A stretch of 64,000 nt of DNA from assembly GCF_964204865.1 (NCBI RefSeq), contig NC_135256.1, positions 14,694,001 through 14,758,000 on the forward strand, written 5' to 3'. This document shows, piece by piece, positions 619-28,100 of the stretch. This DNA comes from Styela clava (Eukaryota). The first letter of the stretch is position 1, and every line of letters begins with the position of its first letter. The position numbers and the translations under genes were made by a program. The notes under the pieces were generated by a model. That model was not told where the DNA came from and searched no databases. It was given only the letters and a program-made list of their open reading frames with translations.

Positions 619-685
619 TGGCAGCTCATGCCACGAACGAACCGTGGCAGCTCATGCCACGAACGAACCGTGGCAGCTCTTGCCA
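619..685. repeat. 26-bp tandem repeat (~2.6 units), each with an internal hairpin
   Basis: tggcagctcatgccacgaacgaaccg starting at 619, 645 and 671; tggca...tgcca inverted arms. Confidence 0.85.
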
Positions 686-784
686 TGGTATAGCGCTATT
701 TGGTCTTCAGTAATCAGTATTAATGATATATTCACAAATTAATGTACCAGATTTTAATTGATCATGTGGAATTATATCTACTTA

Positions 785-801
785 AACCCTAACCCTAACC
801 C
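785..801. repeat. Short interstitial (CCCTAA)n
   Basis: aaccctaaccctaaccc, lying between GC-rich palindromic blocks 590-690 and 880-1035; probably inside a mobile element. Confidence 0.6.
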
Positions 802-1166
802 CAAATCCATCAAAACTGTATTCATTAGAAAAACGTTCCAACTTACCCAATATTTGTCACCATAAGGGACAGTCCTATCTTTACGGCTCACCTGCCGCGG
901 TTACGGCAGCAAAATTTTACCTGCCATTGGTTTTCAATTTGCTGCCGCGGTAACGGAAGCTCGACATTGGTTTGTGGCATTGCGGCCATGGTATGGAAAT
1001 ACCGCCATGGTTTTGCGGCAGCTGCAGACGCCACAGAATACTTAAAACTGCACTTGAGGTAGTGGGTATTGAACCTGGGGCCTTCCGAATCAACAACAAC
1101 AACGTTGTGGCTCACACGAGCAAATCATTAGGTCATCATTACAATTTGAAATCCTATTCGATTTAG

Positions 1167-4100
1167 TAACATCTTGTGACTTTCCTGGAAATCCACGTCA
1201 TGGTAATACGCTTCCTACGCAATCGTCCTACGATATTAATGAATTTGTGGAGTATGTATGTCATCCTGGATACAAGAGAGTTGGAGTCCAATTCTCTATC
1301 TGCCAACCAAGTGGCAAATTTTCAAAGAGTTTCCCCGAATGTAAAAGTGAGTGCCATCGCTCTCATCCAACCGCATGATGCAAATAAATAATTAATATGC
1401 TTGATAATACATCCAGTTGCGCGCTTTGCAGTGATGCTCATTTTCATCTTACTTTTTCAATTCATTTTTCATAGCATAATGGCATCATATATTCTACGAG
1501 ACATACCAGGTCACTAACTAATTGGCATTGCTTTAGTTAATATCATTTAGAAATATAATTGTTTGAAAAATTGTCATCTAATAGAAAGCTCTTCAATCAT
1601 TCTTGCAAATATTATCCAGTCAAAGTTATTCGTTCGATTAAAACCACGTTTTCAAGCGCTGATTAAATACTATTGAAACAAAAGATAAAACGTAGTTATT
1701 ACTATTCAACATATTTCGTATAAAATCGTATTAGAACATTGGAAAACAAATCACGTTATTTGGTGAGATATTCTTGGAATAAGGCTAGACTTTTGTAATC
1801 TTTGTCCTTATTTCATTTTGAGTTAAGTTTCTCAATAATTTTTTGAAGCCTAATATTCCTTAAACTAAACTTTTCTTCCATCATCATAAGAAAGACTCCA
1901 GTGATACCCAGTATGCATGCAAGCTCGCTTTATCATCACGAACATCATTATTGTGTGTAGTACTGTAAATTGATATGTATGGCTAATTTTAGAACAATAT
2001 AATAAATATTCTAATCAGGAATAACGACATGTCAATTTCCCGGAAATCCGACAAATGGTCAAACTCGACCAGGCAAGCCCATCTATGATGTTGGCCAAAG
2101 CGTGATTTTCTTATGTCGAGATGGATTTGAAAGAGATGGTGCAGAGGCAGCCACGTGCCTGGATACAGGAAGTTTCTCCGAAAATGTACCAACTTGCAAA
2201 AGTATGTTTTTATAGATGTCGATATACGGACAGCAAATAATTAAAATATTCTCATTTTGACTTGTTATTTGTTGCATTATATGCTTTATTTAAAATGTTT
2301 TTATAATGTATCGCTGTACTGAACAATGTTTATGTGTTTTAGCACATTACCGAAATATACATGTTTGTCTTCAGAATCCTGTAACTTCCCTGGTTTACCA
2401 AATAACGGCAATACGACGCCTATAAGACTGACCTACGAAGTTGACGATGTTATTATATTTTCTTGTACTTCTGGATATGAAATTGAAGGTGCCGAATCAG
2501 CAACTTGTCAAGCCAGCGGAGAATTTTCAAAGGAAGTTCCTGAATGCAAGAGTAAGAGAACTATCATAAATACATATATTTGTTTTTCTGAATTTGAAAA
2601 AAGTTCGAAACGCGTGGTAAACATTAAGGGATTTTTTCCCACTTCAAGCCACAAAAAACTCTTTGGGAATGTCAACAACAAAATATATAGTCGTGTTCAA
2701 GGTTCTCAAAATTTTTATGCATTAAAAGTCGTTTTGTGGTGAAATTTCGCCGCAGGAAATCCCCGCATAGGAAAAATCGCAAGAGCATTTTGCTTTAAAA
2801 CAAGTACTTGTTTTAAATTGTGATAAAAATGTGATGTATTTGTGATAAAAACAGTTGGGTTCAGAGGGTTAGAGTATTCTCTAAATAACGAATCTTTTTT
2901 AAATAGGGCGATTTTTCCCATGCGGCGAAATTTCCTACGGCGAATTTTCCTAGAACCGGCATTTATACTATGTGTGGTAGTAGCATTTGCTGATGCACAA
3001 CTTATATATCTAAAATCATTGTTACAGAGATAGTAAAATGCAGCAAACCTCAACTTCCTTCTGATGGAAGTCTTATGATTGCATCAACATTTAAAGAATT
3101 ATATGAGATCGGAGAAACAATCATATTTGAATGTAAATCAGGTTACATTCTGATTGGTAGATCACGTTCAACATGCTCTGAAGCTGGAGTATTTAAGCCA
3201 GGCACGCCCGCATGTGAAGGTTAGTACATCTGTTTGAAAAAAGTCGACGAGTTATTATATTATGACCTAACAGACTTCGACTTTTCTCAGTTGTTCCTAC
3301 ATGTGATGAACCCGACTCGCTTGAAAATGGAAAGTTGCTGAGTGATAAATCCCCAGGAAGCAAGTACTCAGAGGGAGAAGTGGTTGGATTTGAATGCAAT
3401 GAAGGATATGTCCTAGAAGGCGCTAAAAGATCGATTTGCGCTAAAGTCGGTGGTAGACTTGAATTCCAACCATCGAATCGGTTTTGTCGAGGTAAATTTC
3501 GTAGTCATACATTGCATCACTGATAAAATCATTGTTCTAGCGCCTAATAGATTTCAGATATTTTTGGCACCATCTAGCATTTGAGGATCTTTGGTCGCGA
3601 TATTGACAATTCGAGTATGTCGTAAGATTGAAGATTGGTCATGGCAAAATCAAAACCAAACACGTATTATATATGAAAATGTCACGTTGTCAAAATCAAT
3701 CTTATTTTCCATATTCAGAAAGAACATGCTTTCCGCCTCGAAGTCCAGATAACGGTAGAATCATCAATCCCAAAGATGAGGACAGCGAATATACCCTTGG
3801 AGTTAAAGTTATTTTTGCATGCAACGAAAAATATACATTAGTGGGAGAACGCGTGTCAACTTGTTCACAAATAAATGGCAAACTTGATTACAGACCTCCT
3901 CCACCGACTTGTGAAAGTAAGTAAATCTTAAATTGGTATTATGGAACCGTTGCAATGCCGCAAACGTGTTTATTGTACTCAGTTAAAGATCATACAATCA
4001 TGTTTTAATCAATTATTAATCGATCATCTATTAGGTTTTATTCTGTGATCTTCTGTTTACATCTATCTATAACAAACCGGGAAGAATTTTTTTTGGCTCT

Positions 4101-7100
4101 CTTGAAGTATGCGCATCAAGATGTCGCACAACCTGAACCCTAACCTGGTACACAACCTGAGTTCAGATTGTGCGCCATCTTGGTGCGCATACTTCAGGAG
4201 GTCCCAATTAGCTAAATAATTTTGAAAGTAAATGATTCTCTATTGATAATAACTGAACTTTGAATTGGTGTTTTATACGAAACGAATATTGTAATTTCAA
4301 ATTGAGCAAAGGGCAAAGAAATGCATTTAATATATGTTCAAAGCTCGGAGAGGAGTCTTATACGACTTTAAGACAATGTGATTATACACTTATTACATCC
4401 ACTAAAATGTCATAATATACTAGCTTTCTTTCTTTCACAAGGAAAAACGTGTTCTGCACCACCTGAGTCCGTATCAAGAACATACGTACCTACAAAGTCA
4501 CTACTTGATGTCGGAGATGTTGTATCATTTTACTGCATCAACGGATTTTTGTTGTTTGGTGAACAAAACGTAACCTGCGTTGATCAGGATCAATTTTCGA
4601 GTGAATTTCCGACGTGTGAAAGTAGGTTGACCTCTATTATAAAGTAACTTTATAAAGCTCCTAGACTATACTGCATTTATAAACCGGTGCATGGTTTTGG
4701 TCGTAAAATGAGGTCGAGAATAAGTAAGATACCAATCGGATATCTATATTTGTCAAACTTAAATGCTCCTATCATATTTTTCCTTGTTTTATTTAAGGAG
4801 TACGTTGTTCAAGACCTGAACGCCCAGAATTTGGTAAAATCAAACCGTTCCGTGGTAACTATGGCATTGGTGATACCGTTACGTTCAGTTGCAGGGAAGG
4901 TTACAAAATATCTGGAAGCGAAACCGCGACCTGCACATTGGTTGCTGGGAGGAGAGCTTCGTTTTCACCGGAGTCTCCATCTTGTCAACGTAAGACCAGT
5001 TTGTTATTTGAAATACGGTACTAAATGCTTTTTGATGCTATAGAATTATTTCAACTATTCGGTAATTTTTTTTGGTTTAATTAAATCGTTATTTTTAATT
5101 ATAAATTAGTATATCCTATTTTCTTACCGAGGGAAGCATTTCACGGTAACTGACAAATGATGAGAGAGATGCTCCATCGGCATTGTGACAAAAGAGAGCT
5201 ATGCTTAAGTATATGGACACAGACACCCAATACTACCACGACAATACAGACTATAATGGTCTGTTAGCTGATCACTCGAATGCTTCAAAATAACTTCCAA
5301 ATTGAATAATATTTGTAATATTCAAAATATACGCTACTATTCAGTAATGCCATACATATTTCATTTGTATAATAGGACAAACATGCCGCAAGCCGAACAT
5401 TCCCTTGAGTGGGTCTTTGTCTCCCGATCGAGATTCATACTACGTTGGAGACAGAGTCGCCTTCTTATGTGACGATGGTTACAAATTAAAAGGAGTTTCC
5501 AGTATTGTTTGTGAAGACCAAGATGTTTTCTCTGATGAAGAACCCGAATGTGAAGGTTCGTAAAAAAATAATTCAATTTTTTATTTTGTGTAATATCAAG
5601 AAAACATTATATCGTAACAAATTTTTCATTACGTAATTGTGACGGTGGTTTATGTTGTTTGCGATTATTAACACGTTGCCCTTTTAAATTTTGTAGTTAA
5701 TTCATTTATTTTACAATATTAACTTATTTATACGCCAAAAAAATTTACTTCGAATAATTGTGGCGTGCTGTGGCGCAATTAGACAACATACTGAAGTATT
5801 AGCCAATTGTCAAAAATGTCAATAACACTATTTTAGTCATAAACACTTTCTCTCTAATTAAATTGAAATGTCCTCAAGGCAACAAACAATGTGTTTAGCA
5901 CATGTTTGAAAATTTATTATTAGCAGGTTGTCAGACAACATTTTTAATTATTGTTTTGTAATGTTCGTAATCATAAAATCCTATTCTGCAAATAATAAGT
6001 AGCAATTTGAATGACATTTCTCGGTATATCAAAATACAAATCTTTATTATTCATCATTCATCATTCGTCATTCATATTCAAAATGCTCACACAGTCTGCC
6101 GTAAATAAACCGAATTTGTCTTACAAACTGATCATCTTGCTTACGAATCAAAATAGTCAGTTTCTCTACTTGATCACTTGAAAGAGATTTTAAAGCATTT
6201 GCTATTTTGTATTCTGAAATGATGTTAAACCTGAACGGAAATTATGTGATGAAACTAAACATCTCAGTTTACCATATAGTATCAATCGGTCAGTAATTCT
6301 CTGTTCTAATAATTACCTGTTCAGCCATAACGTGCGAAAGACCAGGTGAGCCCGATAACGGCTATATTAGAGAATCCAACCGATTATTCCGGTATGAAGA
6401 GGAAGTTACATACGCTTGTGATGCTGGATATAATCTTGAAGGTAGTGAGACACGCACTTGTCAGGAAAATGGGAAGTTTTCTTCAAGAATGCCACGGTGT
6501 GCTGGTGAGCGACATTATTTCAAAATTTAAATTGATGTAGGTATATCGTTGTTGGGTTGCTACTTCAGACATAACTAGAAAAGTTTAAAAATGTCATGCA
6601 TTTCTGGTAATTGTAATGTTGTATGAAAGATTCAAACACATGATTTCATTTTTAATACTTCCATTAAAGTGACCAACCTCACCTTGGAATTAATTTACGA
6701 CAATCTGGAATTATCAAAAGCAGGTTTGCAGTTTCAAATCATGCGCCAATGAGTATTTTTCAATTTTACGAAATTACCGAACCATTCGCTGTCCCAAGGG
6801 CGTTCACGTAATCAACAGTCAGTTACGACCTCCTTTACCTCATCGATTTGCCTAGATTTGTTAACTGATAACGTATGATAATAAGTGACTAGATCCGGTC
6901 AGGAGGGCGAACTTGCAACAGAATATGATCTGCTTGCTGAAATTCAAATCTATATCTTCTCAATATTTCAGAAATTCGTTGTAAGATACCTTTGTTCTTA
7001 CGAAACGGAGAGGTATCTGCAAGCGGGAAGTCGTATATCACCTACAGAGAAACTGTTAGTTATTCTTGTGAAATTGGGTACAATCTTGTCGGGGCCGATA

Positions 7101-10100
7101 CTGCTTCGTGCGAAGAAGATGGTAGTCTAACAGAAATAATCCCCACTTGCGAAGGTAGATAGCGTTTTTCAGTGTGAATTAATTTTCTCAGCTCCCTTTC
7201 ATTTTCTTTCATGAATATATATTTATTTTTAGCCATTATTTGTGACGCCCTTCCGAGGTCGTTTGTATACTCTGTCAGTCCTCTTAGAACAAGATATTCC
7301 GTTGGAGACGTGATAACAATCGAATGCGCTGAAGGATACCGTTCGTTCGGCTCTTCTACGAGTGAATGTTTGCAAACTGGAGAATTTTCAGTTACTGACC
7401 CGAAATGCGAAGGTAAGAAATATGTTTAGTCCCAAACAACCCAATTTTATATTATACGCGAATTATCTTTGGGCAATCAATCACCATATGCAGCCGTAGC
7501 AACATTTTCCACACAGCAGATTGTAACATTTCTGGTATTGCAATGCACTCACTTGCGTAACATATGTTATTAGACTCTCACAACATAGAGACTGTCTGAT
7601 TGTTAGTCATTAATAAATATTAGAATTGTTGTGTGCTTTATTTGTACCTTTTGTCCATTTTCCTCTTTGAATCCTTGTAAGTAATTGTAGTAGAGGAAAT
7701 TCAGAAAAAAAAAACGTTCACTTTTAAAATTTCCGTAGGGATGAACGAGATAATCAAGGTTGCAAAAAAATCATTTGAAACATAAATACTATTAAACAGA
7801 TTTAACAATCTGTGATCACAAATCCAACCACAAATCACCATGACTACGGTTTTAGTTTAATCTAAAAAATCATTGGCTATCTTGCTCATGATATAAAACT
7901 TATAGCCTTATACAATAATAAACAATGGTACTTTTTCAAGACTTCCATATTTTATATAAAAAAGAATAAATTAGAATGATTTAAATTGATGAAATAATTG
8001 AAAAAAAATAAAAATAAAAATCTCCTGCTATTCTGTTTCAGCCATCACATGCTCTTTCCCTGGATCTATCTTGAACGGCAAAGTTTCTCCAGAAAAATCG
8101 CAATACAGGTTTGGTGATCGAGTGCTCTACTTCTGTAGTTCAGGATACAATCTTGTCGGTCAATCTTCATCAACGTGTGGAGGAGTGGGTGTTTTTGAAG
8201 GATCAGTTCCTTTATGTGAACGTAAGTACTTTCAATTATTCTTGTATTGAATCTTGATTGTGCAGCCTCATTGGCTAATTTCCATAAATAAATATTAAAT
8301 TAGCTATACCAAAAGAAGGAAAATAGTGCAAATAATGGAAGTATTTACGTGACCGCGATAACCCTTTGGGGAATCTGTCAAAAAAAATATACCGAAATCG
8401 TCACAGTCTCTTTTTGGATTTAAAATGGCGATGAAGCTTTGAGCTAATCATAGTAATATCATTCGAAATTATACATCGGTCCTACCCTTAAAATAGATTC
8501 CATTTTTCAGCGTTTACATGTCCGAGTCTAGGCATTCTTCGTTTTGGAACGATTCAACCGGTGAAGGAAAACTACAAAGTCGGAGACACAATTACATTTT
8601 TGTGTAGATCAGGATATGAACTCGAGGGATCTACATCCTCTAGATGTCTACTGGGAGGTTCATTTTCTGAACAACTACCTCAGTGTACAAGTAAGATATT
8701 TCAAAAACCTCAAAATGCATTAGTAAAAACACGGCAAAATGTTGATACAGATTTACGCTAGAGTTCATATTCATGCTAGTTTTATGATACACACTCCAAT
8801 TTTAGTAAACTTATGTAACTCAGGAAACATGCATTATATGCAGTATGAGATACCAGATTTGTTATTTGCTACTTAGTGTAAGATTTGAATTTTGGTATTT
8901 GTACTGGATATTTTAACATGATATGACATTTCATATTATATTTTAAATTTTATTCGTCGGACTTCAGAAACCAAGTGTTCACTTCAAGAAGTTATAGAAT
9001 TTGGAATAATTTTCCCACTGAAGAAAGAATATTCTGTGAACGAGAGAGTTACATTCAGCTGTGAATACGGTTACGAACTCAAAGGAGAATCTGTATCTGT
9101 ATGCGGTACGGATGGGGAATTTTCAGACGCAGTTCCAAGATGCATCGGTATGAATTAAAAACTCCAGGAGAAATGTTAAGCATTGAGTTGCATATTTAAA
9201 ACGCTCAACGTATGTGGAGAAATATTATAGCCAAATTTTTCTGGCAGGTTAAATCAGACATCACCGATGCTTCTGTCCTTTCAGATTAGCTAACCAATCG
9301 TAACCTCTTTAGTGTCTACTTTACTGTCCATGAAAATTTTGTCTATCATAAAATTTTCTCCATGAATTGTTTTGAAACTAAAAACCTACTTTTGTAATAA
9401 AGTGCAACGACTTATTGCCGTAATCAGATTTTTTTCATTTAATTAAATTATTCGTACGTTTTGCACGTATGACAAAATATTGGGTCAAAACGCAATAAAA
9501 AACATTCCTGTATTATAGCAATCAAATGTCGTAACCCTGGAAGTCCTAAATACGGTTCAATTTCGCCTGATCGTCCAACTTATGGCATTGGTGAAGATAT
9601 CACATTCAATTGCAAAGAAGGATATCTATTGAGAGGAGCGAGTGTTGCATCTTGTGTTGACGAAAATGTGTTTTCTGCAGCCGTTCCAACCTGCGAAGGT
9701 ATGAATTCGATTTGTCATTGAATTTCTTGAAAGTAATCACATATTTAGGGCATCCAGGTAGCTTATGATTGAGCATCAATCATGTATTTTTATATTGACG
9801 TGAATTATTCGCTATCTTATAAAAAAACTCAGATGTAAGAGTGAATATATATTATTTTGTATGATGTATTATTTATTTAACAGAAATTGGATGCAGTTTC
9901 CCGGGTAATCCCGATAACGGATTTACGAATCCCGTACAATCTACTTACCCGGTTGGATCACGAGTGGATTTTGAATGTAGATCTGGATACATGCTCGAAG
10001 GAAAAGATTCTACACGTTGCGAAAAAGGAGGAAGTTTTGCGGATTCTCTACCAACTTGTGAAGGTATACTCTTTTATGCTAAAACCTATTCACATGATTA

Positions 10101-13100
10101 TTATATGTTATTCATTTATAATTGTTATGGTGAAATAATAATGATAGTTAATTTTACAATAAAATCTTAAAAAACATCAGGCATATGGCAGAAAACAAAA
10201 TTTATTTCAGTTGTTCATTTCCTTTTTCGTTTGACATAATCTACTCAACTTCGTAGGTCATGTAAAGCGTGGGGTATGGTGGGAAAGACAGTGAGACTGT
10301 ATTAATACATTGGTTATTTCAGAAATTACATGTGAAAATCCTGGAGTCCCAAGGTTCGGAGAAATATTTCCAGATCGTTCAAGTTATACACTTGGACAAA
10401 CTGTATCTTTCAGTTGTTCAGAAGGATACAAATTGGAAGGAGAATATTCAATTGATTGCGAAGAAGATGGAAAATTTTCAGATTCCATTCCAACTTGCAA
10501 AGGTACTCGGCAATACAAATTTAATTGCAATTTCATTATACAATATATATAGGTATATATTATTAAGTGATCCTGCTGTAAAATTATTGAATTTCCACAA
10601 TGTAGTCACCATGTATGTGAAAAAATGTTGCTGTGGAACCAGTATGGATCCCGAACGTTTTCCCGTTTTGCACTCAATAAATATATATATTATTTTTATT
10701 TTCAGAAATCACATGCAAATTTCCTGGAAAACCGGACAACGGTAACACCACACCTAGAAGATCATCTTATTCTGTTAATGACGAAGTAACATTTGAATGT
10801 GAAGAAGGATATGAATTGATAGGACTTGAATCAAGTCGGTGTACAGGCAGCGGAAGATTCACTGGCTTTGTACCCACATGTAAACGTAAGTTAATATGCA
10901 TTAGCATAGGGTCATATAGAAATGATTCACCAGTATTGCAAATAATTTTTTTTTATTTGGATTGTTTTCAGTTGCCGTGTGCAACAATCCTGGTTCACCA
11001 AAATTTGGGTCGGTGTCACCAAATCGACCTAAATATGCAGTGGGAGATATCGTTTCTTTCTCTTGTGATATTGGATACCTTATTGACGGGATAACAACAA
11101 CGATTTGCCAAGACAACGGTAAATTTTCGGATGGAGTGCCGAGTTGCCAAGGTAAATTGCCTCTAATAAGCATGCGAGAGCAAATTAAACATGGAGTAAC
11201 TGTAGTCACTTTTATAAGAACGATTGGGAAAGAGTAACAATACAATCCTATCAAAACTAGTTGCTTCGTAGGTCTTATTCAAATATCTGAATGTTGAAAC
11301 AATTTTTCGTGATAAAAATTGTCAATAGAAATTATATATATATATACTACTACTATCAACTTTCTAATAACACAGAGGTCACTTGCTCATTTCCCGGTAA
11401 TCCGATGAATGGTGTGACATCGCCCACACGATTTTCGTATGATGTTGGAGCCGTAATTAAATTTGAATGCGAAGAAGGATTCACAATTTCAGGAACGGAT
11501 TCCGCACGCTGCTTAGAATCTGGCGCTTTTTCGTCTGCTCTTCCATCATGTAACGGTAAGTTTGAATTCAAATGATATATTGATGTAGTCATTGGCACTT
11601 ATATTTTCATACAGATACAAAAATTTTCATTTATTATTCAGAGATTACATGTGGGAATCCAGGAAGCCCATCTTCTGGATCTATTAAGCCAAATTCTCCT
11701 ACTTATAACGTTGATCAACGTGTCACGTTTGAATGTGACGATGGCTACGAATTGGAAGGAACTAAATCATCTGTGTGTGAGACGAGTGGTCGATTTTCGG
11801 ATTCAGTACCAACATGCGAAAGTATATAAATACGTAGTATTTTTTGTCTGAATTTTAAAACACGTAACATAACCCATGCGAGGGCCTAATACATTTCCAA
11901 ATAAACTGTACATTGTACAGCCACTCACATTGTATATCAGGCCATCGGATGCTAGGGCAGTTTAAGTAACTTGATAGAACATACGGTATTTTTTAATGTA
12001 TTCCTTAATTACAGGAATTTCCTGCAGCTTCCCAGGAAACCCAGTTGATGGATTCACATCTCCAACCCGATCATTTTATTCTATCGGAGAGGAAATTACA
12101 TTCGAATGCAAAGAAGGTTTCGCTCTTACGGGAGCACAATCTGCAAAATGTCAAGATGATAAAACTTTTTCGAAAAATCTGCCAACTTGTAGAAGTAAGG
12201 ATTGACCAGACTTCATATATAGGAAAAGTACTTACGTTGTTTCTTCTGTGAATCTTTTTGAATCAAACAAATTTTCTTTTCTAGGAAGCACTTGCAACTA
12301 CCCAGGCAGGCCAAGTTCGGGATATACTAACCCAAATCTCCCTATATATAATATTGGAGATGAAGTTTCCTATTCCTGCAGAAGAGGATTTCGTATTGTT
12401 GGTACATCGGTATCCACGTGTGGTAAAGATGGTCAATTCGACAATGCTGTACCTTCCTGCAAGCGTAAGTGGACTTCGCTTTTATATGGTTTCACTGGAG
12501 TGACTCGAATAATGTTCTGAAATTACATAAATTTTCCACCTGCACTATAGTGGTCGACGTCTATCGCTATTGGTTAACAATAAAAAAATTAATTCCAGGT
12601 GCCACATGTAGCTTTCCAGGAAATCCCGATGACGGTGATACCATTCCTACCAGAGAAACATATACTTTCAGGCAAAGAGTAACGTTTTCGTGTCGAGAAG
12701 GTTACACAATTGTAGGAGCTATATCTGCTTTTTGTCAAGTGTCTGGAAAATTTTCGGAGGAACTACCGTCATGTCAACGTAAGTGCAAATAACTATATAG
12801 AACCCTTTACAATTCCAACAGAGTGACTTTAGTCGTTTATAGCTATAGTTTTGATTGTTGGTAAAACCGCAACAGAGATTACAGAATAAAGGAATAAAGG
12901 ACAGTATTTTTTAAGTAATTACTGCCATTATATGCGTCATATTTTGCTTAAGAAGTAGAGCCTACGCAATATAATATAATTATACATAATTTCGGTTAAT
13001 TTACGCTGTAATTTCAAAGCAGTTTATGGCACTTGAAGTGTTTTTTAATTTCATCTCACCAAAATTTAACATGTTTTCTTATCATGCAGGTGTAATATGT

Positions 13101-19100: not shown

Positions 19101-22100
19101 ATAAAGATTGAAAGTAGCAAAATATTGACAATGAAGTCCATTAGTTCCTTTAATAGCCTTCTAAACACAATTTTTCTGAATTTTCAGTGAAGGTCGTCGC
19201 GTGCAATTATCCAGGAAATCCAACTAATGGAGCAACATTGCCTAAGAAAGATTCTTATTCGACGGGAGAACAAGTTACTTTCCAGTGTGACAAAGGATAT
19301 GTTATATTTGGCGCCGTGATGGCGAGATGTTCCACGGCGGGAAGATTTTCTGAAATACTACCGACATGCAGAAGTATTACTTCATAATATTATTATTATT
19401 ATAATTTTACTTTTAATTTTATCTGCGAGGAACATTAGAAAAGTCTATTTAAATGCAAGATTTTATACTCCTTGTTAACCACCATCTAAATTTGTAAAAT
19501 ATAGTCAAAATTATTGACTTTACAAAATTTAAAATAATTGGCTCATTTATGTATTTAATAACAGATTATGAATCTTTCCATAATAGTTTTTGATTTTGCG
19601 TTGAAGGTGTTACTTGTAACCACCCCGGTACACCAATCTTTGGTTCAATAAGTCCAGATATTCCAAGATACACGGTGAGTCAAAATGTGGTGTTCTCTTG
19701 CAATGATGGTTATAAAATCAAAGGAGTCGAGACTACGATGTGTGATTATAACGGACAATTCGAAGATCCAGTGCCGAAATGTGAAAGTATGTATTTTTAG
19801 AAATTTCTTTTAATTTTATTTTGATTCTGAAACATCTTGATAGTTCTGTCTTTCTTGAAGATAATCACCAAGTTCAATTTTATAAAATTCTGCAAAGGTC
19901 GATGAATGTAAAATTTAAATCGGGATCTAGGACGCATCTCGTTTAGTGAACATTGTGATTTTTCTTGACGCATTTTATTTAGTAAACAGTGTAATTTTTC
20001 TTGTGGTATTTCCTGAACGCATTTAGCCTACTGTCAAATTGTCTTAAAAAATGTATTTATATACACCTTCTCCAGGAACGATGTGCAGAAATCCAGGAAA
20101 ACCAGATTTCGGAACCATGACGCCGGATTACGTCACTTATTCTATTGGGCAAACAATAACTTTCAGTTGTTCCAGAGAATATAATCTAGATGGATTTGAA
20201 ACAACAAAGTGCAATAATGACGGAAGCTTTACAAATCCCGTACCTACATGTGAACGACGTATGACGACTATTTTAATATTCTATAACTTAACCAAGTGTC
20301 TTTGTTTACAAATATTTATATCATATATGTTTTGGGAGAAAAATTCTCCTATGCCACAACATATCAAATACAGTCCTATAATATGTTTGTTTTATGAATA
20401 ATTCTATGTGGTGTTTTACATACATTACATCAACATCTCTTCCGAAAAGACTATCCTATATGTAAGCATGAAATATTTTAGGCAACCGGGCGGAGTTTTC
20501 TCAATTTTAAGGCAAAATAAATATCGTGGATTTTACTTCACCATTCACCGTTAATATAATAGTAAAATGTAATATAAAATCATATCGCTATAATTTCTTT
20601 TATCATTATTTCAGGATCCACTTGCCGTAATCCTGGGTTATTTGACGGAGGAAGCATTGAACCAAACTATCCAATATATTCGGTCGGTCAAGAGATTACA
20701 TTTTCCTGCATGTCAGGTTATAGATTAGAAGGAGCTAAGTCAGCAATTTGTGAAGAAAATGGACGATTTTCAGATCCAAGACCTGTTTGCCGAAGTGAGT
20801 CTAATTTACATAAATTTAATAAATATCTTTGTTGTCCATAAAATAAAAGATACACAGGCAATCAGCGAAGTTACTTTATTGAATTTAGTTTTTTGTTAGA
20901 ATCAATTTTATCGATTGGTATCGAGTTTTCCCTATCAGGGTAACTAGGAAGAAGCCGTTGTACACGGAGACCATTCAAACGCATGACCTCTTATGTTTTG
21001 AACTTGGGTATATGCGACTTTTAATTGCACGCGTTACCAAACGTGGGGTATGTTAATTAATCTTCGAAGTACACATCTTTTTGAGCAAATTATAAAAAAA
21101 AAGTTCATAGGCAATATGCCCCAAAGGCGGAAGGTTTTTGATTTCAGTTATTTGGCCAGGCAACTATTTGTCTATTTATGTAAATTTATTTGCTGAAACT
21201 TTGAGCTGAAAACGACAGAACTTTATTTTCAGTGGAAACATGTAAAAATCCTGGACGTTTATCGAATGGAGATATGTTTCCTGATCTGCCAACTTACTCT
21301 GCTGGACAATCGATCAAATATTTTTGTAATGATGGATTCATCATACAAGGGTCTCAAACAACAACGTGTGAGAAAGGAATATTCACAAATCCTGTTCCAG
21401 TCTGTGAAAGTAAGTTTGATAAAGTAATACTTTTACAAAAATTTACCGTGCTTGCTATTTGTGTGATTTTACATAAAAATTTCGGAGTAATCGTATTGTA
21501 TCGACACACTTAAGCTTGTATTTGGATTGAGCTAACACGATGTTTTCTCAAACCATTCCGTGCCATCTTCCTTGAATACCAGATAAGTTGTATAAAATGC
21601 GTTTTAGGAAACCGAACGTTATTAAATTATTTGGATATTTTAATAAACTATGTTTAGAATTTGATATGAAAAATTTGTCTTCAAGATGAGTTTACATATA
21701 ATTTTCATCACCAGTTTTCTTTTCCGCTACTACACATTAATAAGATATATATAACGAAATTGTCCAGAATGGTATTCTCATAGCTTTGATAATAAATGTG
21801 TGCAAAAAAACTTTCTCATTTTCTAGTAAACCACTCACTTTATTATAGGAATTTTAATGCCTCATTTTTCTGTATAATTCCAGCAATACTTCTCGTTACA
21901 CATTTTTAAGAAATCGTATCATGTTTTTAATCCTGACAAAATAGTTCCAAAATCAAATTAAATTTTTGTCACTATTCAAATGATATGTTTAACTGTAATA
22001 TAATAATTTTAAAATTTACTATATTTTATGGAAGATTTAAAAAAACGTGCACGCTTTTTATGTCACGAAAAATAGCTTTGCTGAAATGTAATATGATGGA

Positions 22101-25100
22101 ATAAGATTATCTGAAATAATCGTTGTTTTATCTTAGGAATTACATGTCGATTTCCGGGCACGCCTGTCAATGGAAAGACAGTACCCAGAAAACCGTCTTA
22201 TAAACTAAATGAAAGAGTTGAATATGAATGTGACAAAGGTTACATCATGGTTGGAGATGATACATCAGTTTGTACCAGAAGTGGAGACTTCTCGGAATCT
22301 CTACCTCTATGCAAACGTAAGTCGTAAAAAAGAAAAAAAAGTGTTCTAAATGAACTCAAACTATTAGCAATTTTTGATATTATGTTTATATTTATATGAA
22401 CAAAAATAAATGCCGCATTGTAAATTTTATACACGTGATACAATACATAAAATCATTATCTCATAGATAGAGTAACTGGAATGCCTCATCTGTTTTAGTA
22501 AGAACTATACAGCTTTTTGCGTCTGCCCGATCACTTCCGTAGACTTTTCATGACAACTATATAAATTGCACTATAAATAGTTATTTGTCAGGCTCAACGA
22601 ATCTCAGTTTACCGTCTATGTAATCGACATCTTTCTACCATGAGGAACAAAATAAGATTTCTGTCAAAGTCTAAATCTTCAATTTCTAAGCGTTCTTGCA
22701 TCTTTATTATATTAAATAAACTTTTTCCGTGTTACAAAACCAATTGTCACATTGCAAATTGTTTTATTCAGAAGCCAGTTGCGATCCCCTAAAAGAACCA
22801 ATCAATGGCCGCATAACACCTCTAAAGTCGTCTTATGACTTGAACGACATAATAAATTTTGAGTGTGATGAAGGATATCAAATAATTGGGGAACCAAATT
22901 CAAGATGCTCACCGAACGGTGAATTCTCATCGCCCGCACCCATGTGTAGAAGTGAGAAAAAATTAAATATGTCATTTTATATCGTATCTGTTTAGGCATG
23001 ATGTCGACTCAATATATTTAGCTATTTATGCAATATATCATTGGTATAAATTCGCTGATGCTCATTTCATGTTCGCATTTGAAAATCAAGACCGATTCTC
23101 AAACTAAATGAACATTAGTCATGCTAAGACAATATTATCAACCTTCAACCAATGTTGCCATTCTTAATGAAATTGATTACAAATCTCGAATAAAGTTTCA
23201 AACTTAATTTACATTACATTTATATTTTGATGACGTGGCTTGTAAACCACACAAGTCAATTCATATCACAGCAGTTGGAGTTAAAAAGGAAACTGTAACT
23301 TTTTGAAAGTCATAACATAAAACCTGCTTAATCATTAGCATTTGTATAATAAAACATAAACTACTCATTAGCGTTTTTTCTTGTCATATTCAAATATTCT
23401 TAAGCTAATTACAAAATAAAGCAAACTTGATATTTCATTGAACAAACGTTAGTTTTGTTTTACTATCTTTGATTTTCTTTTATTCACAGGAGTGAAATCA
23501 TGCGGGTTCCTCGGTAACCCCATCAATGGAAAAACTCTACCTCGTAAAGCTACTTATCTTATCAATGAAAGTGTTCGATTTGAATGCGAAGATGGTTATA
23601 GAATAATAGGACCAAATTCTGCATTCTGTTTGGAGTCGGAGGAATTTTCTGAGACTTTACCTACGTGTGAACGTAAGACGTTTCATTTGATTATTCTAAA
23701 AACGTAGAATTTACAGCTTATTGTGTAATGCGAAAAAAATGATGATAAATTTGAAAAACAACCGACAGATGGAATACTGATATAAACTACAAATATGATA
23801 GGGCGCATTGATCTGCCTTGCTGCAGTCACTTGCTTATCCACTGTGCAACGGCAATATTAAATTTGTAGATCGATTTTAATTATAAATAGGTATAAAATT
23901 GTGTCAATTAGTAAAAAAATTAGTCTTGTATAACATACGCAATGTTTTTTTTTATAAATATAATTATATGAATATCGTAACATTACCATTATAGCTTACT
24001 ATTCCATTTAACAGCGTCGAGATGTCTCAATCCCGGTCAAGCTATTAATGGTAAGACAATTCCTTCTAAGCAATTTTATGACACTGACGAAGTAGTGGAA
24101 TACAGGTGTGATGAAGGTTATCAACTTATTGGCGAGAAAACGGCAAGATGTCGTAACAATGGACAATTTTCAGCTCAGCCACCTTCATGTACTAGTAAGT
24201 AATAAGAAGTACACAAAGGACAATGACAGTATCGCGTTATTATTAAAATTGAAATATTGTATTTGAAAACAAGTATTACATGTAATTTCTCCTGTTTTAC
24301 TACTTTTGCTTTGGTAAAATGTAATTGATTCCATCAAGTGCGCTCTGTCCAAGTTTCCAACAAATAATATTTACGATCGTTGCATTACAAAAATTTGTAT
24401 ATACTCCACCATAACTTTTAGCTCAACTCGAGTTATAGTCATAGTCAAGTTTATTTTTTCTGAGTAGTGTTTGTAATTTGTGTGTAGCCTGGAAAATAAT
24501 GTAGATATGAGGGCCTTGCTTGTTGTTGGGCTTGTGTGGAACTCTGGAATTGGAGATTGGCAATTTTGCTGGCATCAAATTTAGAGTGTAGTTATGTTGA
24601 TACATTCCTGTGCATCGTATTAAAATTTTGAATTTCGTGAATCGGTAACAAGAATTTAAAGAACGATAGAGTGCAAAGTTCAAGACTTTATTTTACCTGG
24701 AGTTGAGATTCGTTTGTTGACTCGCGGTCGAATGGAAATTCTTCAACTCCGCATCTATTTGTTCACTAATAGGCCCGCGGTTCTCTGTTTTCAATATCGT
24801 AGCCAGAGATCAAAAGATATGTAGCCAGATATGTTCATCGCAATAGCTAACGGGTATTTTGAAATCCAACAGATACGGTTTATGTGCTGTGGCTTTTATC
24901 GAGTCTTGTATGCTGTAAAATTGCCGAAAACCCCGTAATAAATTACATACTATATTATATTATAACGACCTTAATTTCTGAGAAAGTGGTGAAATCAAAG
25001 AAGTGTCACTCGCTTATTTTGTTTATACGTCTTTAAACTTATTGCTTCAAATTGATTGTGCTTCAAATTATATCGTGAATTTGAAAAAAAAACATTTTTC

Positions 25101-28100
25101 TTGTGTTTTGCGGCAATTAGTTTTTTGAGTCCTGGCATTAAGAAGCCAATTATTGACACAATAACACGAGCTACATTTGATGAACATTCATTTGCGCTTT
25201 AAATACTAGTTTTAACTTAACGACATTGTAATGCAACCGAAACTTTTTAAATCTTAGTTTTGTTAATTTCGTCCAAAAGTGATGACACTAAACGATATAT
25301 ACCATGTAATTAATTTTTGTATAGTTCTTGATTAGATATTCATTTTTAATAAAAAACAGGCGTGAAGTGCAGCTATCCAGGAACACCTGATGGTGGATCG
25401 ACCGTGCCACGTCGAGCAACTTATAACGGTGGTGAAATAATAGAATTTTCATGCAAGGACGAATGTTATGAACTGGTCGGAAGTAAAACAGCAATTTGTA
25501 TGCCCAATGGACTTTTCTCGCAAGAGGTACCATCATGTGAACGTGAGTTTGATAACTTTTGCTATTATGCTCTTTCACCCAAACACTGAAATATTAGATA
25601 GAAGTATTATAACGTCATATTATAATGAATATTTGGTAAAAAACCTAATAATGATGATTCATCATTTCAACGGATGATTAGAATTCCCCCTAAATTTAAC
25701 TCTAATCTAAGTTTTACACTAATCGAATCTTATCTAAATATGCATGTGGTCGAAAGAAACAATTGATATTTCTGCACATTTGAGCCGCGTGAACAAGCCA
25801 TATACATACGACTATTGATAGTTTTGTAACGATGATAACAGCAAAACTCTAACGCAGTACTTCTATTCCTTATTACAACGACAAATTCAATTTTTAGCAA
25901 AGATGTGTCTGCACTTTCCTACTATTCCAAACTTTGGAACACTAGAGCCGCTTCAGAAAAATTATACTTGTGGGCAGAAAATAGACTACAACTGCTTTGC
26001 TGGATACAGACGAACTGGTCCTACTCATACTTCATGTCTACCTGATGGGACGTTTGAAAAACACCTCGCTGAATGTGAAGGTATGACTGTGAAAGACTAA
26101 TTTGAATTGTATAATATAATTTTTTACAAGTTTGCAATTTTTCCGTTTTAAATCTGACTTATTTATCAACCAGCGTATTTGTGTCATATATCTGAAAATT
26201 GTCCCATATCTCTCACACGTTTGTTAGATTTAAAAAAAAAAACAGTGGTCAGACGGTTACCTCAAATATTTTGTTAAGATAAATTTTGGGCCAGGTTTTG
26301 TAAACAATATCTTCAACTTTCAGTTGTGAAGTGTAAACCACCGCCAACTCTTCGTAATGGTTTTACAACAACCAATTTCGGAGGAATGGTAGTTTTTGAA
26401 AATGTTGTAACGTATCGATGTAGAACTGGATATAGAATGGTTGGTGTGGATTCTATTAAATGCGGAGAAGATGGCTCATACATTGGAGCGGTGCCGGAAT
26501 GCAAAGGTACGTTCTACAAGCAAGTATTCTAGCAGTATGAAGTAGTTGTATCGAGTATGTTTTTTTCAATATAGATCCATTAACAGGACATCAGATTTAG
26601 TACCATTTAAAAAACAGTGATGCAGACATCTCAATAAATCGCAATTTGTATTAGTAACGCATTGTCTGAGGTCTCCCAATTGATATGATCAATTTGTGGT
26701 CTATTCAACAATAATTAACTTTAAATGAATGAAACTGAAAGATAAATCAAATGAATGAAACTGAAACATTGTAATCTATTTCAAAAGCAATTCTATGCCA
26801 ACAACCAAGATCACCATCCAATGGAAGAGTTATTTCTTCTGGACGTGACTGGCGTGTAGGCGAAGTAATGGATTTTCAATGTGATGAACATTATACTATT
26901 GTTGGAAAAAGTTTTGCTGTTTGCCAAGGAAATGGCGAATGGAATAATCCACCACCAACCTGTGCCGGTATGTATAAAATATATGACTTTTGCAATTCAT
27001 TTTATTTGAACACAGTATGATTTGCATTTAGGAATAGTATGAGATACGATTGACAAAGTAAGACTGTTATGTACGGAAAGCTGTAACCAGTGAACCAGTA
27101 CTGGTTCCATAAACCAGTAAACATAGTAAAGGGATTGTTGATTCATCACATCGAATTCGATACATATTTTTTTTTTCTGTAAAATTCCAACGTTTTTATG
27201 TATTGTTGAAATTTTTTGTGTGTAACTCATTCTGTGCGAGATTGTCGGCGTTTTAAATGCAAATTTTCAATCTATCTTTTCAAATTACTGTCATTCCTTG
27301 TGTCGAAAAACGATCTTCCGCGATTGTCAATTGCCACACATGAGCACATTCAAGTGCAAATATCTTTTCAAATTTCACTATTCGCTAATGCCAATTTTTT
27401 TGTTTTTTTCATGCCATATAGTTTACATGAAATTTTATTTCTAATTATATGTTGTCATTCGAAGAGTTTATAACCTTTCTCTAAAGTTTTTATATCAATC
27501 TTTTAGAGCCCATTTGCCACGAAAACTGCCATTTTCCAAGAATCAGGGGCCGTCCTTGTCAATGTGATGAAGAATGTCAAAACAGAGGAGATTGTTGTAA
27601 TGATTATAAAATGAAGTGCAGTAAGTCTGTGTAAAGTTATTTTAGAATAAATAAAATGATTGCGATACATAAATACAAAGTCAACACAAATTAATATTGC
27701 AATCAATTATTAATTGAATTCAATGATCAGCTGGGAACCACCTACAACTCATAATGGAGATATCAAATTGATGTCTGTATTTTGTTTACCACCATTTTCG
27801 TTTAAATATTTTTTTTGCCAGAAAATGACAATGAACTCCATGTTAAATTATATCTCCTTAATTTATTTTACACTCGAGTACAAAAACATTTATGTACAAC
27901 ATACCATGTGATTTACCGATGACCCCAATATATATTTTTTTATTGGTTCGTAAATAGATCAATTTTAATAAACAATGTATATATTATGAATTTATTTATT
28001 AAATATGAAACTGTATGTTATTGTTTCTGTGAATTTAATGATTTCATTACAATTTCAGCATTGGGAACGTGCAAAAACAGATGTGGTGCAGCAATGAACA

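What the first reader, a model, noticed from the sequence alone, without database searches (positions are those of the whole stretch)
1167..26506. 51 consecutive tryptophan-less CCP modules: a distinct Phe-type sushi array
Seen: the residue before the x4-P-x-C end is Phe in 48 modules, Tyr in 2 (CCP6, CCP51) and Leu in 1 (CCP11). By my hand translation there is no Trp codon at all in about 3,080 aa. Established: this Trp and the four Cys are the near-invariant core of CCP/SCR modules (factor H, CR1, SVEP1, selectins). Inference: TGG to TTY needs two substitutions, so it was fixed in a founder module before expansion. It has been kept although the modules are otherwise strongly diverged, which suggests a selected CCP subtype. 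Possible reasons (speculative): altered stability or mechanics, or avoiding Trp oxidation/halogenation in an extracellular matrix such as the tunic.
Basis: partly seen in the sequence, partly recalled or inferred. Interest (0 to 1): 0.85.

Follow-up and report, generated by a model that had tools for sequence, protein, structure and literature searches.

The report
Sea-squirt sushi-repeat giant lacking core tryptophan
A real, already annotated sea-squirt (Styela clava) gene encodes a secreted rod of about 60 sushi/CCP repeats, 57-58 of which in a row carry phenylalanine where this domain almost always has tryptophan; this is an uncommon but recurrent and conservative variant of a well-known domain, most simply explained by copying of one altered founder repeat.

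Summary
Window 1167-26506 (+) holds 51 single-exon CCP modules with AG/GT borders and phase 1-1. The hallmark Trp position holds Phe in 48, Tyr in 2 (modules 6 and 51) and Leu in 1 (module 11). There is no in-frame TGG, junction codons included. All 10 modules tested pass Pfam Sushi, and an AlphaFold model (pLDDT 97) superposes on solved CCPs.

The array is longer than reported: 8 more CCP exons lie upstream of the window. The gene is Styela clava RefSeq "CSMD1-like" (XP_077970683.1, 3714 aa). Its order is signal peptide, one W-type CCP, 57-58 non-W CCPs, one W-type CCP, two somatomedin-B domains.

The founder inference is supported. A Botryllus transcript is collinear with several modules and also all-Phe, and 35 Styela modules form one all-non-W clade with 6 Botryllus modules.

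"A selected, distinct subtype" is only partly supported. Phe is as conserved as other core residues. But W is two mutations away from F/Y, non-canonical Trp is not depleted gene-wide, and non-W arrays arose separately in Ciona, Clavelina, Lingula, sharks and teleosts. In ordinary long arrays W is 98.5% and F 0.4%.

Verdict: a new variant of a known kind, of modest interest.

The parts
1167..1346 (+). CCP exon 1, F-type (TTT); cassette exon
   Evidence: AG/GT borders, phase 1-1. Pfam Sushi 42.7 bits. Skipped in P0001, present in the older RefSeq isoforms P0155, P0157 and P0161.
2019..2201 (+). CCP exon 2, F-type
   Evidence: peptide identical in P0001
2375..2551 (+). CCP exon 3, F-type
3028..3219 (+). 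CCP exon 4, F-type (RefSeq acceptor 3028; a second AG at 3034)
3291..3491 (+). CCP exon 5, F-type, long Cys3-Cys4 loop
3719..3916 (+). CCP exon 6, Tyr (TAC) at the Trp position
4442..4621 (+). CCP exon 7, F-type
4798..4989 (+). CCP exon 8, F-type
5376..5555 (+). CCP exon 9, F-type
6325..6504 (+). CCP exon 10, F-type
6972..7154 (+). CCP exon 11, Leu (CTA) at the Trp position
7233..7412 (+). CCP exon 12, F-type
8042..8221 (+). CCP exon 13, F-type
8511..8690 (+). CCP exon 14, F-type
8968..9147 (+). CCP exon 15, F-type
9519..9698 (+). CCP exon 16, F-type; best match of Botryllus P0115 module 3 (62%)
9884..10063 (+). CCP exon 17, F-type
10323..10502 (+). CCP exon 18, F-type; best match of Botryllus module 4 (66%)
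10706..10885 (+). CCP exon 19, F-type; best match of Botryllus module 5 (67%)
10972..11151 (+). CCP exon 20, F-type; best match of Botryllus module 6 (50%)
11376..11555 (+). CCP exon 21, F-type
11642..11821 (+). CCP exon 22, F-type; best match of Botryllus module 8 (50%)
12015..12194 (+). CCP exon 23, F-type
12285..12464 (+). CCP exon 24, F-type
12599..12778 (+). CCP exon 25, F-type
13090..13269 (+). CCP exon 26, F-type
13620..13799 (+). CCP exon 27, F-type
13890..14069 (+). CCP exon 28, F-type
14417..14596 (+). CCP exon 29, F-type
14873..15052 (+). CCP exon 30, F-type
15223..15402 (+). CCP exon 31, F-type
15954..16133 (+). CCP exon 32, F-type
16242..16421 (+). CCP exon 33, F-type
16809..16988 (+). 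CCP exon 34, F-type
17102..17284 (+). CCP exon 35, F-type
17413..17592 (+). CCP exon 36, F-type
17717..17896 (+). CCP exon 37, F-type
18233..18412 (+). CCP exon 38, F-type
18632..18811 (+). CCP exon 39, F-type
19188..19373 (+). CCP exon 40, F-type
19607..19786 (+). CCP exon 41, F-type
20076..20258 (+). CCP exon 42, F-type
20615..20794 (+). CCP exon 43, F-type
21233..21409 (+). CCP exon 44, F-type
22137..22316 (+). CCP exon 45, F-type
22772..22951 (+). CCP exon 46, F-type
23490..23672 (+). CCP exon 47, F-type (RefSeq acceptor 23490; a second AG at 23493)
24015..24194 (+). CCP exon 48, F-type
25360..25542 (+). CCP exon 49, F-type, one extra Cys
25898..26080 (+). CCP exon 50, F-type, one extra Cys
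26324..26506 (+). CCP exon 51, Tyr (TAC) at the Trp position
26788..26967 (+). CCP exon 52, canonical W-type (TGG), plus a second Trp
   Evidence: Pfam Sushi 50.2 bits
27507..27620 (+). Somatomedin-B domain 1 exon, with RGD at 27584-27592
   Evidence: Pfam PF01033 36.3 bits; splice sites and junction codon; present in P0001
28059..28228 (+). Somatomedin-B domain 2 exon with the C-terminus and TGA stop
   Evidence: Pfam PF01033 37.4 bits

Best explanation
The region is most of one real protein-coding gene of the ascidian Styela clava (RefSeq 'CUB and sushi domain-containing protein 1-like', XP_077970683.1 = P0001, 3714 aa).

The product is a secreted, unanchored, beads-on-a-string protein. Its order is signal peptide, one ordinary W-type CCP, 57 non-W CCPs (58 with cassette exon 1167-1346), one ordinary W-type CCP, and two somatomedin-B domains, the first of which holds an RGD.

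Shown here:
- Each module is one symmetric phase 1-1 exon.
- The modules are bona fide CCPs by profile and by predicted fold.
- The core Trp is replaced by Phe, and rarely by Tyr or Leu.

Inferred: a single module acquired Phe. It was then multiplied by tandem exon duplication, partly in two-module units, before Styela and Botryllus diverged, while the terminal modules kept Trp. The same lineage also spread to neighbouring genes on the same chromosome.

Phe is kept because the site must hold a large hydrophobic or aromatic side chain that packs in the core. It stays Phe rather than Trp because TGG has no aromatic single-step neighbour. F/Y and W are therefore two mutationally separated states, and an array inherits whichever its founder had.

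The F-type modules thus work as ordinary CCP spacers and binding modules. The likely role of the protein, inferred only from its architecture and from the database name of the Botryllus relative, is a soluble extracellular adhesive or complement-related binding rod.
For: - Exon anatomy and the zero TGG count.
- Pfam Sushi 34-50 bits against a cut-off of 20.7 on all 10 modules tested.
- The profile of the 51 modules hits CR1, CR2, factor H, FXIII-B and DAF in the PDB.
- AF2 model at pLDDT 97.3; Foldseek top hits are all CCPs, TM 0.79-0.89, rmsd 1.2-2.0 A.
- Gene identity, signal peptide, W-first/W-last layout and only 5 Trp in 3714 aa. The upstream exons are seen in the genome.
- No transmembrane stretch.
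- SMB domains.
- Modules average 37% pairwise identity (maximum 56%), while F is kept in 94%, like Y21, G and P.
- Lag-2 identity exceeds lag-1, and two subtypes alternate.
- The Botryllus transcript is collinear, reaches 50-67% on matched modules and has F in 8 of 8.
- The tree without the W column has a clade of 42 all-non-W modules (35 Styela, 6 Botryllus, 1 C8 paralogue), local support 0.87. It needs 31 state changes against about 67 after shuffling.
- In the genome sample, F/L/Y-type arrays lie almost only on contig C8 and mostly start with a W-type module.
- Two assemblies differ at 30 of 3714 residues, none in a Cys, F or P core column.
- In W-type arrays the few non-W residues are mostly Y and F, both two-step changes.
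Against: - The exon chain therefore rests on RefSeq models, on exact agreement with my splice sites, and on one Botryllus transcript-derived entry.
- The 'mutational barrier plus founder' account predicts that F and W are nearly equivalent, which was not measured.
- Only 35 of 54 Styela modules fall in the single clade. The rest are unresolved on 58 columns, so more than one W-to-F event inside the gene is not excluded.
- Within the window part alone, zero non-canonical Trp in 51 modules is mildly low (p about 0.014-0.043).
- Styela F-type modules favour Ala/Ser two residues before Cys3, where W-type modules have Arg/Leu/Ile. This could be a co-adaptation.
- The function is inferred, not shown.
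Confidence: 0.72

Rival explanations
1. Adaptive Trp avoidance. Phe was selected over Trp because Trp is a liability in this protein's environment, for example oxidation or halogenation by peroxidase chemistry in haemolymph or tunic. On this view the F-type is a functionally specialised CCP subtype.
For: - F is kept in 48 of 51 modules despite 37% mean identity.
- There is no Trp anywhere in the 51 window modules, p about 0.014-0.043 given 6-8% of ordinary modules with an extra Trp.
- F/L/Y-type arrays occur in several neighbouring genes on contig C8.
- Non-W modules are relatively frequent in tunicate proteins among the hits.
Against: - The same protein keeps canonical Trp in its first and last CCP, and 2 further Trp in upstream F-type modules. 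That gives 2 in 58 against 3.5-4.8 expected, which is no depletion.
- The adjacent convergent gene and most CCP genes of the same genome are W-type.
- All-F or F-rich arrays also occur in sharks, teleosts and a brachiopod, which have no tunic.
- Non-reversion needs no selection, because W is two steps away.
- There are no localisation or chemistry data.
Confidence: 0.12
2. Mechanical or thermodynamic tuning. The smaller Phe loosens the CCP core, giving modules that unfold or flex more easily. A rod of about 60 such modules would then have elastic properties different from W-type rods.
For: - The array is very long and unbroken, as expected of a mechanical element.
- The lineage-specific small residue (Ala/Ser) two positions before Cys3 would further reduce core volume.
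Against: - The AF2 model is as confident as any CCP and superposes at 1.2-2.0 A, although AF2 says nothing about stability.
- The Ala/Ser feature is absent from the other F-type arrays.
- There are no experimental data.
Confidence: 0.1
3. Artefact or dead DNA. The array is a decaying pseudo-exon field or an assembly or annotation artefact, and Phe reflects relaxed constraint.
Against: - All 51 exons are open and have canonical splice sites in matching phase.
- All four Cys are kept in 51 of 51 modules.
- Two independent assemblies give 99.2% identical proteins, with changes only outside the Cys, F and P core columns.
- There is a collinear Botryllus transcript entry.
Confidence: 0.02

Closest known systems
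Botryllus schlosseri 'putative C3b receptor CR1_tm' (QKY88669.1 = P0115)
   Same: - It is the closest sequence relative found.
- It has 8 CCPs, all with Phe at the Trp site.
- It is collinear with Styela modules 16, 18, 19, 20 and 22 at 50-67% identity, 47% over 487 aa.
- It shows the same alternation of the two module subtypes.
   Different: - It is only 618 aa, probably a partial transcript.
- Its tail after the last CCP is low-complexity, hydrophobic and unrelated to the Styela SMB end.
- The 'C3b receptor' name is a depositor's label. I could not read any functional test; the likely source, Peronato et al. 2020, Dev Comp Immunol 103:103530, is cited in PMC7565592 but not held.
Vertebrate RCA proteins (CR1, CR2, factor H, C4BP, DAF, MCP)
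   Same: - They are long tandem CCP arrays with one module per phase 1-1 exon, grown by internal duplication.
- They are the best PDB sequence and fold matches.
- Some fish RCA-like genes also hold F-type runs: sawshark CR2-like 19 of 19, Salminus C4BP-like 9 of 11.
   Different: - Human and other solved members have the conserved Trp (PMC10518620).
- CR1 and CR2 are membrane-anchored, whereas this protein has no transmembrane stretch and ends in two SMB domains.
- No C3b/C4b binding is shown.
SVEP1 / polydom and CSMD1-3 (the names given by automatic annotation)
   Same: They are giant extracellular proteins with 30 or more CCPs, about 27-34% identical over CCP stretches.
   Different: - Pfam on record for P0001 lists only Sushi, a Sushi-like family and Somatomedin_B. 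There is no CUB, vWA, EGF, HYR or pentraxin.
- SVEP1 arrays are W at essentially every module, for example macaque 32 of 32.
Other non-W CCP arrays: Ciona XP_026694042.1 (Trefoil-EGF-31 CCP), Clavelina CAK8697585.1, Lingula LOC106158743
   Same: Runs of CCPs with Phe or Tyr at the Trp site, amplified in tandem.
   Different: - Once the W column is ignored, their modules are closest to W-type modules of other proteins, not to the Styela F-type modules. This points to separate origins.
- Their domain architectures differ.

Membership tests
Sushi / CCP / SCR domain (Pfam PF00084) | Profile score above Pfam's curated gathering score | tested here: met
   All 10 modules tested score 34-50 bits against a cut-off of 20.7, including the Tyr, Leu and long-loop ones. 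P0001 carries PF00084 on record.
Sushi / CCP / SCR domain (Pfam PF00084) | Four conserved Cys in a module of about 60 residues (C1-C3, C2-C4 disulfides) | tested here: met
   The four Cys are present in 51 of 51 modules. The disulfide pairing itself is not measured, only implied by the model.
Sushi / CCP / SCR domain (Pfam PF00084) | Near-invariant Trp between Cys3 and Cys4 | tested here: not met
   F in 48, Y in 2, L in 1, W in 0. This is a hallmark, not a formal criterion: 1.5% of modules in ordinary arrays also lack it. I therefore file these as variant CCPs.
Sushi / CCP / SCR domain (Pfam PF00084) | Small beta-sandwich CCP fold | tested here: met
   The AF2 model of module 1, with the 51 modules as its alignment, has pLDDT 97.3. 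The Foldseek PDB top matches are CCPs of C6, E-selectin, factor B, C2, factor H, beta2-GPI, CD46 and CD55, at TM 0.79-0.89. This is a prediction only.
Sushi / CCP / SCR domain (Pfam PF00084) | One module per symmetric phase 1-1 exon (typical, not universal) | tested here: met
   51 of 51 exons
Membrane complement receptor of CR1/CR2 type | Transmembrane anchor and cytoplasmic tail after the CCP array | tested here: not met
   No hydrophobic stretch in P0001. The protein ends in two SMB domains and a stop.
Membrane complement receptor of CR1/CR2 type | Binding of C3b/C4b or cofactor/decay activity | not testable with these tools
   There is only a depositor's name on the Botryllus relative.
CSMD (CUB and sushi multiple domains) | CUB domains alternating with CCPs | tested here: not met
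   No CUB family among the Pfam hits on record for P0001, and none seen between the exons in the window.
SVEP1 / polydom | vWA, EGF, HYR and pentraxin domains besides CCPs | tested here: not met
   Pfam on record for P0001 lists PF01033, PF24469 and PF00084 only.
Somatomedin-B domain (PF01033) | Profile score above the gathering score, with the eight-Cys knot | tested here: met
   36.3 and 37.4 bits against a cut-off of 23.1 for 27506-27619 and 28061-28225.

The most novel reading that the evidence does not exclude
Styelid ascidians carry a chromosomally clustered family of secreted CCP-rod genes (contig C8: this gene, its upstream neighbour, and the 16.30-16.42 Mb cluster). In these the core Trp is systematically replaced by Phe, Tyr or Leu, and Phe was favoured over Trp for a physical reason: resistance to oxidative or halogenating chemistry in blood or tunic, or softer, more extensible modules. 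That would make this a functionally distinct CCP class rather than a frozen accident.
Probability: 0.12. Interest if true: 0.55.

Novelty: new variant of a known kind. Interest (0 to 1): 0.3.

Why it matters
The Trp between Cys3 and Cys4 is taught as one of the two hallmarks of CCP modules (PMC10518620). Here nature supplies 57-58 consecutive diverged modules, with a collinear relative in another genus, that do without it. This gives three things:
- a ready-made natural experiment on how much the Trp contributes to CCP folding and stability;
- a clear case of how the genetic code (TGG has no aromatic single-step neighbour) can freeze a founder's residue across a whole repeat array;
- a warning that motif-based CCP finders requiring Trp will miss such arrays.

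It does not open a new kind of biology. The substitution is conservative, the gene is already annotated, and similar arrays exist elsewhere.

Tried and rejected
I did not try another route.
The census of the W-position residue therefore rests on 22 ten-kb loci, and only 150 of 1069 candidate CCP exons were scored.
- Long orthologues: no orthologue of 2043-6500 aa turned up. The next best hits after the Styela protein were amphioxus, coral, mollusc and vertebrate SVEP1/CR1 at 34% identity or less.
- Ciona P0013: considered as an orthologue and rejected. It has Trefoil and EGF domains, and its modules are nearest to W-type ones.
- Compensating core change: I looked for one shared by all F-type arrays and found none. 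Column 42 (Ala/Ser) is specific to Styela.
- Literature: searches for a described 'Phe-type' CCP and for the Botryllus CR1 paper found nothing readable. This library is incomplete, so absence here is weak evidence.
- Compositional bias as the cause of Trp loss: rejected, because neighbouring genes in the same 35% GC DNA keep Trp.
Exons went in by reference, and the database protein P0001, returned by the representative search, stood in for the joined product. Peptides were joined only for counting letters inside a script.

Full report
**What is in the sequence**

The window is AT-rich eukaryotic DNA of about 35% GC, with no N. A profile built from the modules and run over all six frames finds 52 CCP modules on the + strand between 1175 and 26963. 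It also finds 11 more on the - strand at 30747-37050, which belong to a different, convergent gene.

Each + strand module sits in its own exon:
- The AG acceptor lies typically 8 nt before the Cys1 codon.
- The GT donor lies 4 nt after the Cys4 codon.
- Every exon length is divisible by three, and 37 of the first 51 exons are exactly 180 nt.
- All introns are therefore phase 1. Their median length is 281 nt.

At the position that aligns with the consensus Trp:
- 48 modules have Phe (38 TTT, 10 TTC).
- Modules 6 and 51 have Tyr (TAC).
- Module 11 has Leu (CTA).
- Module 52 has Trp (TGG).

There is no in-frame TGG in the 3035 full codons or in the 50 split junction codons of the 51 exons.

All ten modules sent to Pfam, among them the Tyr, Leu and long-loop ones, match Sushi (PF00084) at 34-50 bits against a cut-off of 20.7.

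The modules are old copies. Mean pairwise identity is 37% and the maximum is 56%. Even so, the four Cys are invariant, and G, Y21, P and the Phe are kept in 90% or more.

**Fold**

I ran AlphaFold2 on module 1, with the 51 modules as its alignment. It gives pLDDT 97.3.

Foldseek against the PDB returns CCPs of C6, E-selectin, factor B/C2, factor H, beta2-glycoprotein I, CD46 and CD55, at TM 0.79-0.89 and rmsd 1.2-2.0 A.

A sequence profile of the 51 modules hits CR1, CR2, factor H, FXIII-B and DAF.

**The gene**

The window is G000:C8:14694001-14758000.

A profile search of 1.84 billion representative proteins returned P0001 as its top hit, at 3543 bits with 59 matched stretches. P0001 holds the peptides of exons 2-52 letter for letter. 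It is Styela clava XP_077970683.1, 'CUB and sushi domain-containing protein 1-like isoform X3'.

Genome DNA upstream of the window shows the rest of the gene. There are eight more CCP exons within 3.8 kb: the first is W-type and the next seven are F-type.

The product therefore reads:
1. Signal peptide.
2. One W-type CCP.
3. 57 non-W CCPs, or 58 with exon 1167-1346.
4. One W-type CCP.
5. Two somatomedin-B domains (Pfam 36-37 bits; exons 27507-27620 and 28059-28228), then the stop.

Other points about the gene:
- Current RefSeq isoforms skip exon 1167-1346, but the older isoforms P0155, P0157 and P0161 include it in exactly the predicted context.
- There is no transmembrane stretch.
- There is no CUB, vWA, EGF or pentraxin domain, so the automatic names are only CCP-array look-alikes.
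- The whole protein has five Trp: the two canonical ones at the ends, one extra in the last CCP, and two at non-canonical places in upstream F-type modules.
- Two independent assemblies give proteins that differ at 30 of 3714 residues, none at a Cys, Phe or Pro core column.

**How unusual is it?**

In 109 named long CCP-array proteins found by homology (SVEP1, CR1, and amphioxus, coral and mollusc arrays), the position is W in 98.5% of 3,897 modules, Y in 0.7% and F in 0.4%. [quoted passage not shown]

The 150 best hits of my F-biased profile are still 89% W, and most of the Phe comes from a handful of proteins:

| Protein | Organism and name | Trp-site pattern |
|---|---|---|
| P0001 | Styela clava, this gene | non-W throughout except the ends |
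| P0115 | Botryllus, 'putative C3b receptor CR1_tm' | F in 8 of 8 |
| P0013 | Ciona | F in 24 of 31 |
| P0133, P0144 | Clavelina | P0133 F in 15 of 16; P0144 F and Y, no W |
| P0096 | Lingula | F-rich |
| P0066 | sawshark, 'CR2-like' | 19 of 19, nearly identical repeats |
| P0130 | Salminus, 'C4BP-like' | F in 9 of 11 |

There are also mixed W/F arrays in Ciona, Clavelina, Prochilodus, Umbra and Chiloscyllium.

So F-type arrays are rare but recurrent, and they sit in public databases. I found no paper that describes them as a type. The library searched is incomplete.

**One subtype or many?**

Ignoring the W column, I asked which module from another protein is nearest to each non-W module:
- Botryllus modules are nearest to Styela modules, at up to 62-67%.
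- Ciona, Clavelina and Lingula non-W modules are nearest to W-type modules of other proteins.
- Fish F-type modules are nearest to each other.

The change has therefore happened several times and was then amplified locally each time. It does not define a single family.

**Founder and expansion in the styelid lineage**

- The Botryllus transcript aligns in register with P0001 residues 1331-1813 at 47% identity. Registers shifted by two modules give 40-41%.
- Its modules find Styela modules 16, 18, 19, 20 and 22 as best partners, in order, at 50-67%. That is above the 56% ceiling among Styela paralogous modules. The array and its Phe thus predate the split of the two genera.
- A FastTree of 243 modules built without the W column contains a clade of 42 modules, all non-W: 35 from the Styela gene, 6 from Botryllus and 1 from a C8 paralogue. 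Local support is 0.87. The W/non-W label needs 31 changes on the tree, against about 67 after shuffling. Resolution on 58 columns is poor, so the other 19 Styela modules are simply unplaced.
- Identity at lag 2 exceeds lag 1 in the middle of the array (0.42 against 0.39). Two subtypes alternate there, C-x-F-P-G...N-G and C-x-N-P-G...F/Y-G, which points to duplication of two-module units.
- The terminal modules kept Trp, as expected if only internal exons were copied.

**Spread in the genome**

In 220 kb sampled around the best genome matches:
- Non-W arrays lie on contig C8. They are the - strand neighbour 22-27 kb upstream of the window (W-F...F-W) and a cluster at 16.30-16.42 Mb, with patterns such as WFFLLYFFF and WFIFFYFYF.
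- Loci on C16, C2, C1 and C14 are all W. One locus on C5 has two F.

This is a biased sample, because only the best 150 of 1069 candidates were scored.

**Selection or accident?**

The Phe column is as conserved as the other core columns, so the site is under purifying selection. That is not evidence that Phe is preferred to Trp.

- All single-base neighbours of TGG are non-aromatic or stop codons (Arg, Gly, Ser, Leu, Cys, stop).
- From TTY, Trp is reached only through Leu (TTG) or Cys (TGY), whereas Tyr and Leu are one step away.
- The data fit two mutationally separated states. W-type arrays stay W, and their rare exceptions are mostly the two-step aromatic residues Y and F.
- F-type arrays drift only to Y, L and I.

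General avoidance of Trp is not seen. Ordinary modules carry a non-canonical Trp in 6-8% of cases. Zero in the 51 window modules gives p of about 0.014-0.043. But the 58 non-W modules of the whole gene hold two, against 3.5-4.8 expected. The protein also keeps Trp in both end modules.

The only lineage-specific companion change I found is Ala/Ser, instead of Arg/Leu/Ile, two residues before Cys3. Other F-type arrays lack it.

**Function**

Nothing here tests function. The architecture (signal peptide, no anchor, about 60 CCPs, two SMB domains with an RGD in the first) suggests a long soluble or matrix-bound adhesive or binding rod.

The Botryllus relative carries the depositor's name 'putative C3b receptor'. 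A review notes a putative CR1 that is over-transcribed at Botryllus generation change (PMC5465252). I could not verify that it is the same transcript.

**Limits**

- No RNA reads were available.
Exons went in by reference, and P0001 from the search served as the joined product.

**Verdict**

- The founder-then-expansion inference is supported.
- The 'distinct selected subtype' reading and the chemical rationale are not supported by anything testable here.
- The feature is a new variant of a known kind in an already annotated gene. Interest is modest, at 0.3.

Noticed in passing
window 645-1056: A dispersed repeat of about 410 bp (SINE- or MITE-like) lies in the intron just upstream of exon 1. 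At least 40 copies at 86-89% identity are spread over many contigs of the genome.
   Followed up: no
window 1167-1346: The first CCP exon of the finding is a cassette exon. It is absent from the current RefSeq isoforms (P0001, P0151, P0152) and present in older ones (P0155, P0157, P0161). The isoform lengths (3714, 3654, 3477, 3418 aa) suggest that whole 60-aa modules are skipped.
   Followed up: partly
window 3028/3034 and 23490/23493: Exon 47 has two acceptors 3 nt apart (23490 and 23493), and exon 4 has two that are 6 nt apart (3028 and 3034). RefSeq P0001 uses the upstream one in both. Isoform P0151 differs by one residue at about module 46/47.
   Followed up: partly
window about 8042-16421 (modules 13-33): Two module subtypes alternate: C-x-F-P-G..N-G and C-x-N-P-G..F/Y-G. 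Identity at lag 2 exceeds lag 1. The Botryllus relative shows the same alternation.
   Followed up: partly
window 27507-28228: The gene ends in two somatomedin-B domains. The first carries RGD (27584-27592) inside the Cys knot, where vitronectin's SMB has no RGD (the vitronectin comparison is from my own knowledge). CCP mega-array plus C-terminal SMB pair is an architecture I did not see in any other hit.
   Followed up: partly
window 30747-37050 (- strand): A convergent neighbour gene has 11 W-type CCP exons. Most also have Trp at the strand-2 aromatic position and a fifth Cys near the N-G turn. Donors lie 7 nt after Cys4 rather than 4.
   Followed up: no
L007 (G000:C8:14664001-14674000), - strand; 21.9-27.1 kb upstream of the window: A second, shorter gene with 12 CCP exons has the same layout, W-type at both ends and F-type between. 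It is probably a paralogue of the gene studied.
   Followed up: partly
L008-L013 (G000:C8:16.30-16.42 Mb): A cluster of further CCP arrays. Several start with a W-type module and go on with F, L, Y or I at the Trp site (WFFLLYFFF, WFIFFYFYF, WFFWF), while two are mostly W and end in F (W-WWWWFFF, WWWWW-F). Sampled loci on C16, C2, C1 and C14 are all W; one on C5 has two F.
   Followed up: partly
alignment column 42 of the modules (two residues before Cys3), all F-type exons of the window: Styela non-W modules have Ala or Ser here in 67%. W-type modules, in Styela or elsewhere, have mostly Arg, Leu, Ile or Val. Other F-type arrays do not share this.
   Followed up: partly
P0066 (Pristiophorus japonicus 'complement receptor type 2-like') and P0130 (Salminus brasiliensis 'C4b-binding protein alpha chain-like'): These vertebrate RCA-like proteins hold runs of nearly identical, recently amplified F-type CCPs (19 of 19 and 9 of 11). 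P0118 is mostly Tyr-type.
   Followed up: partly
P0115 residues 492-618: The tail of the Botryllus 'CR1_tm' entry after its last CCP is a low-complexity hydrophobic stretch unlike any domain. It may be a retained intron or UTR rather than a true membrane anchor.
   Followed up: no
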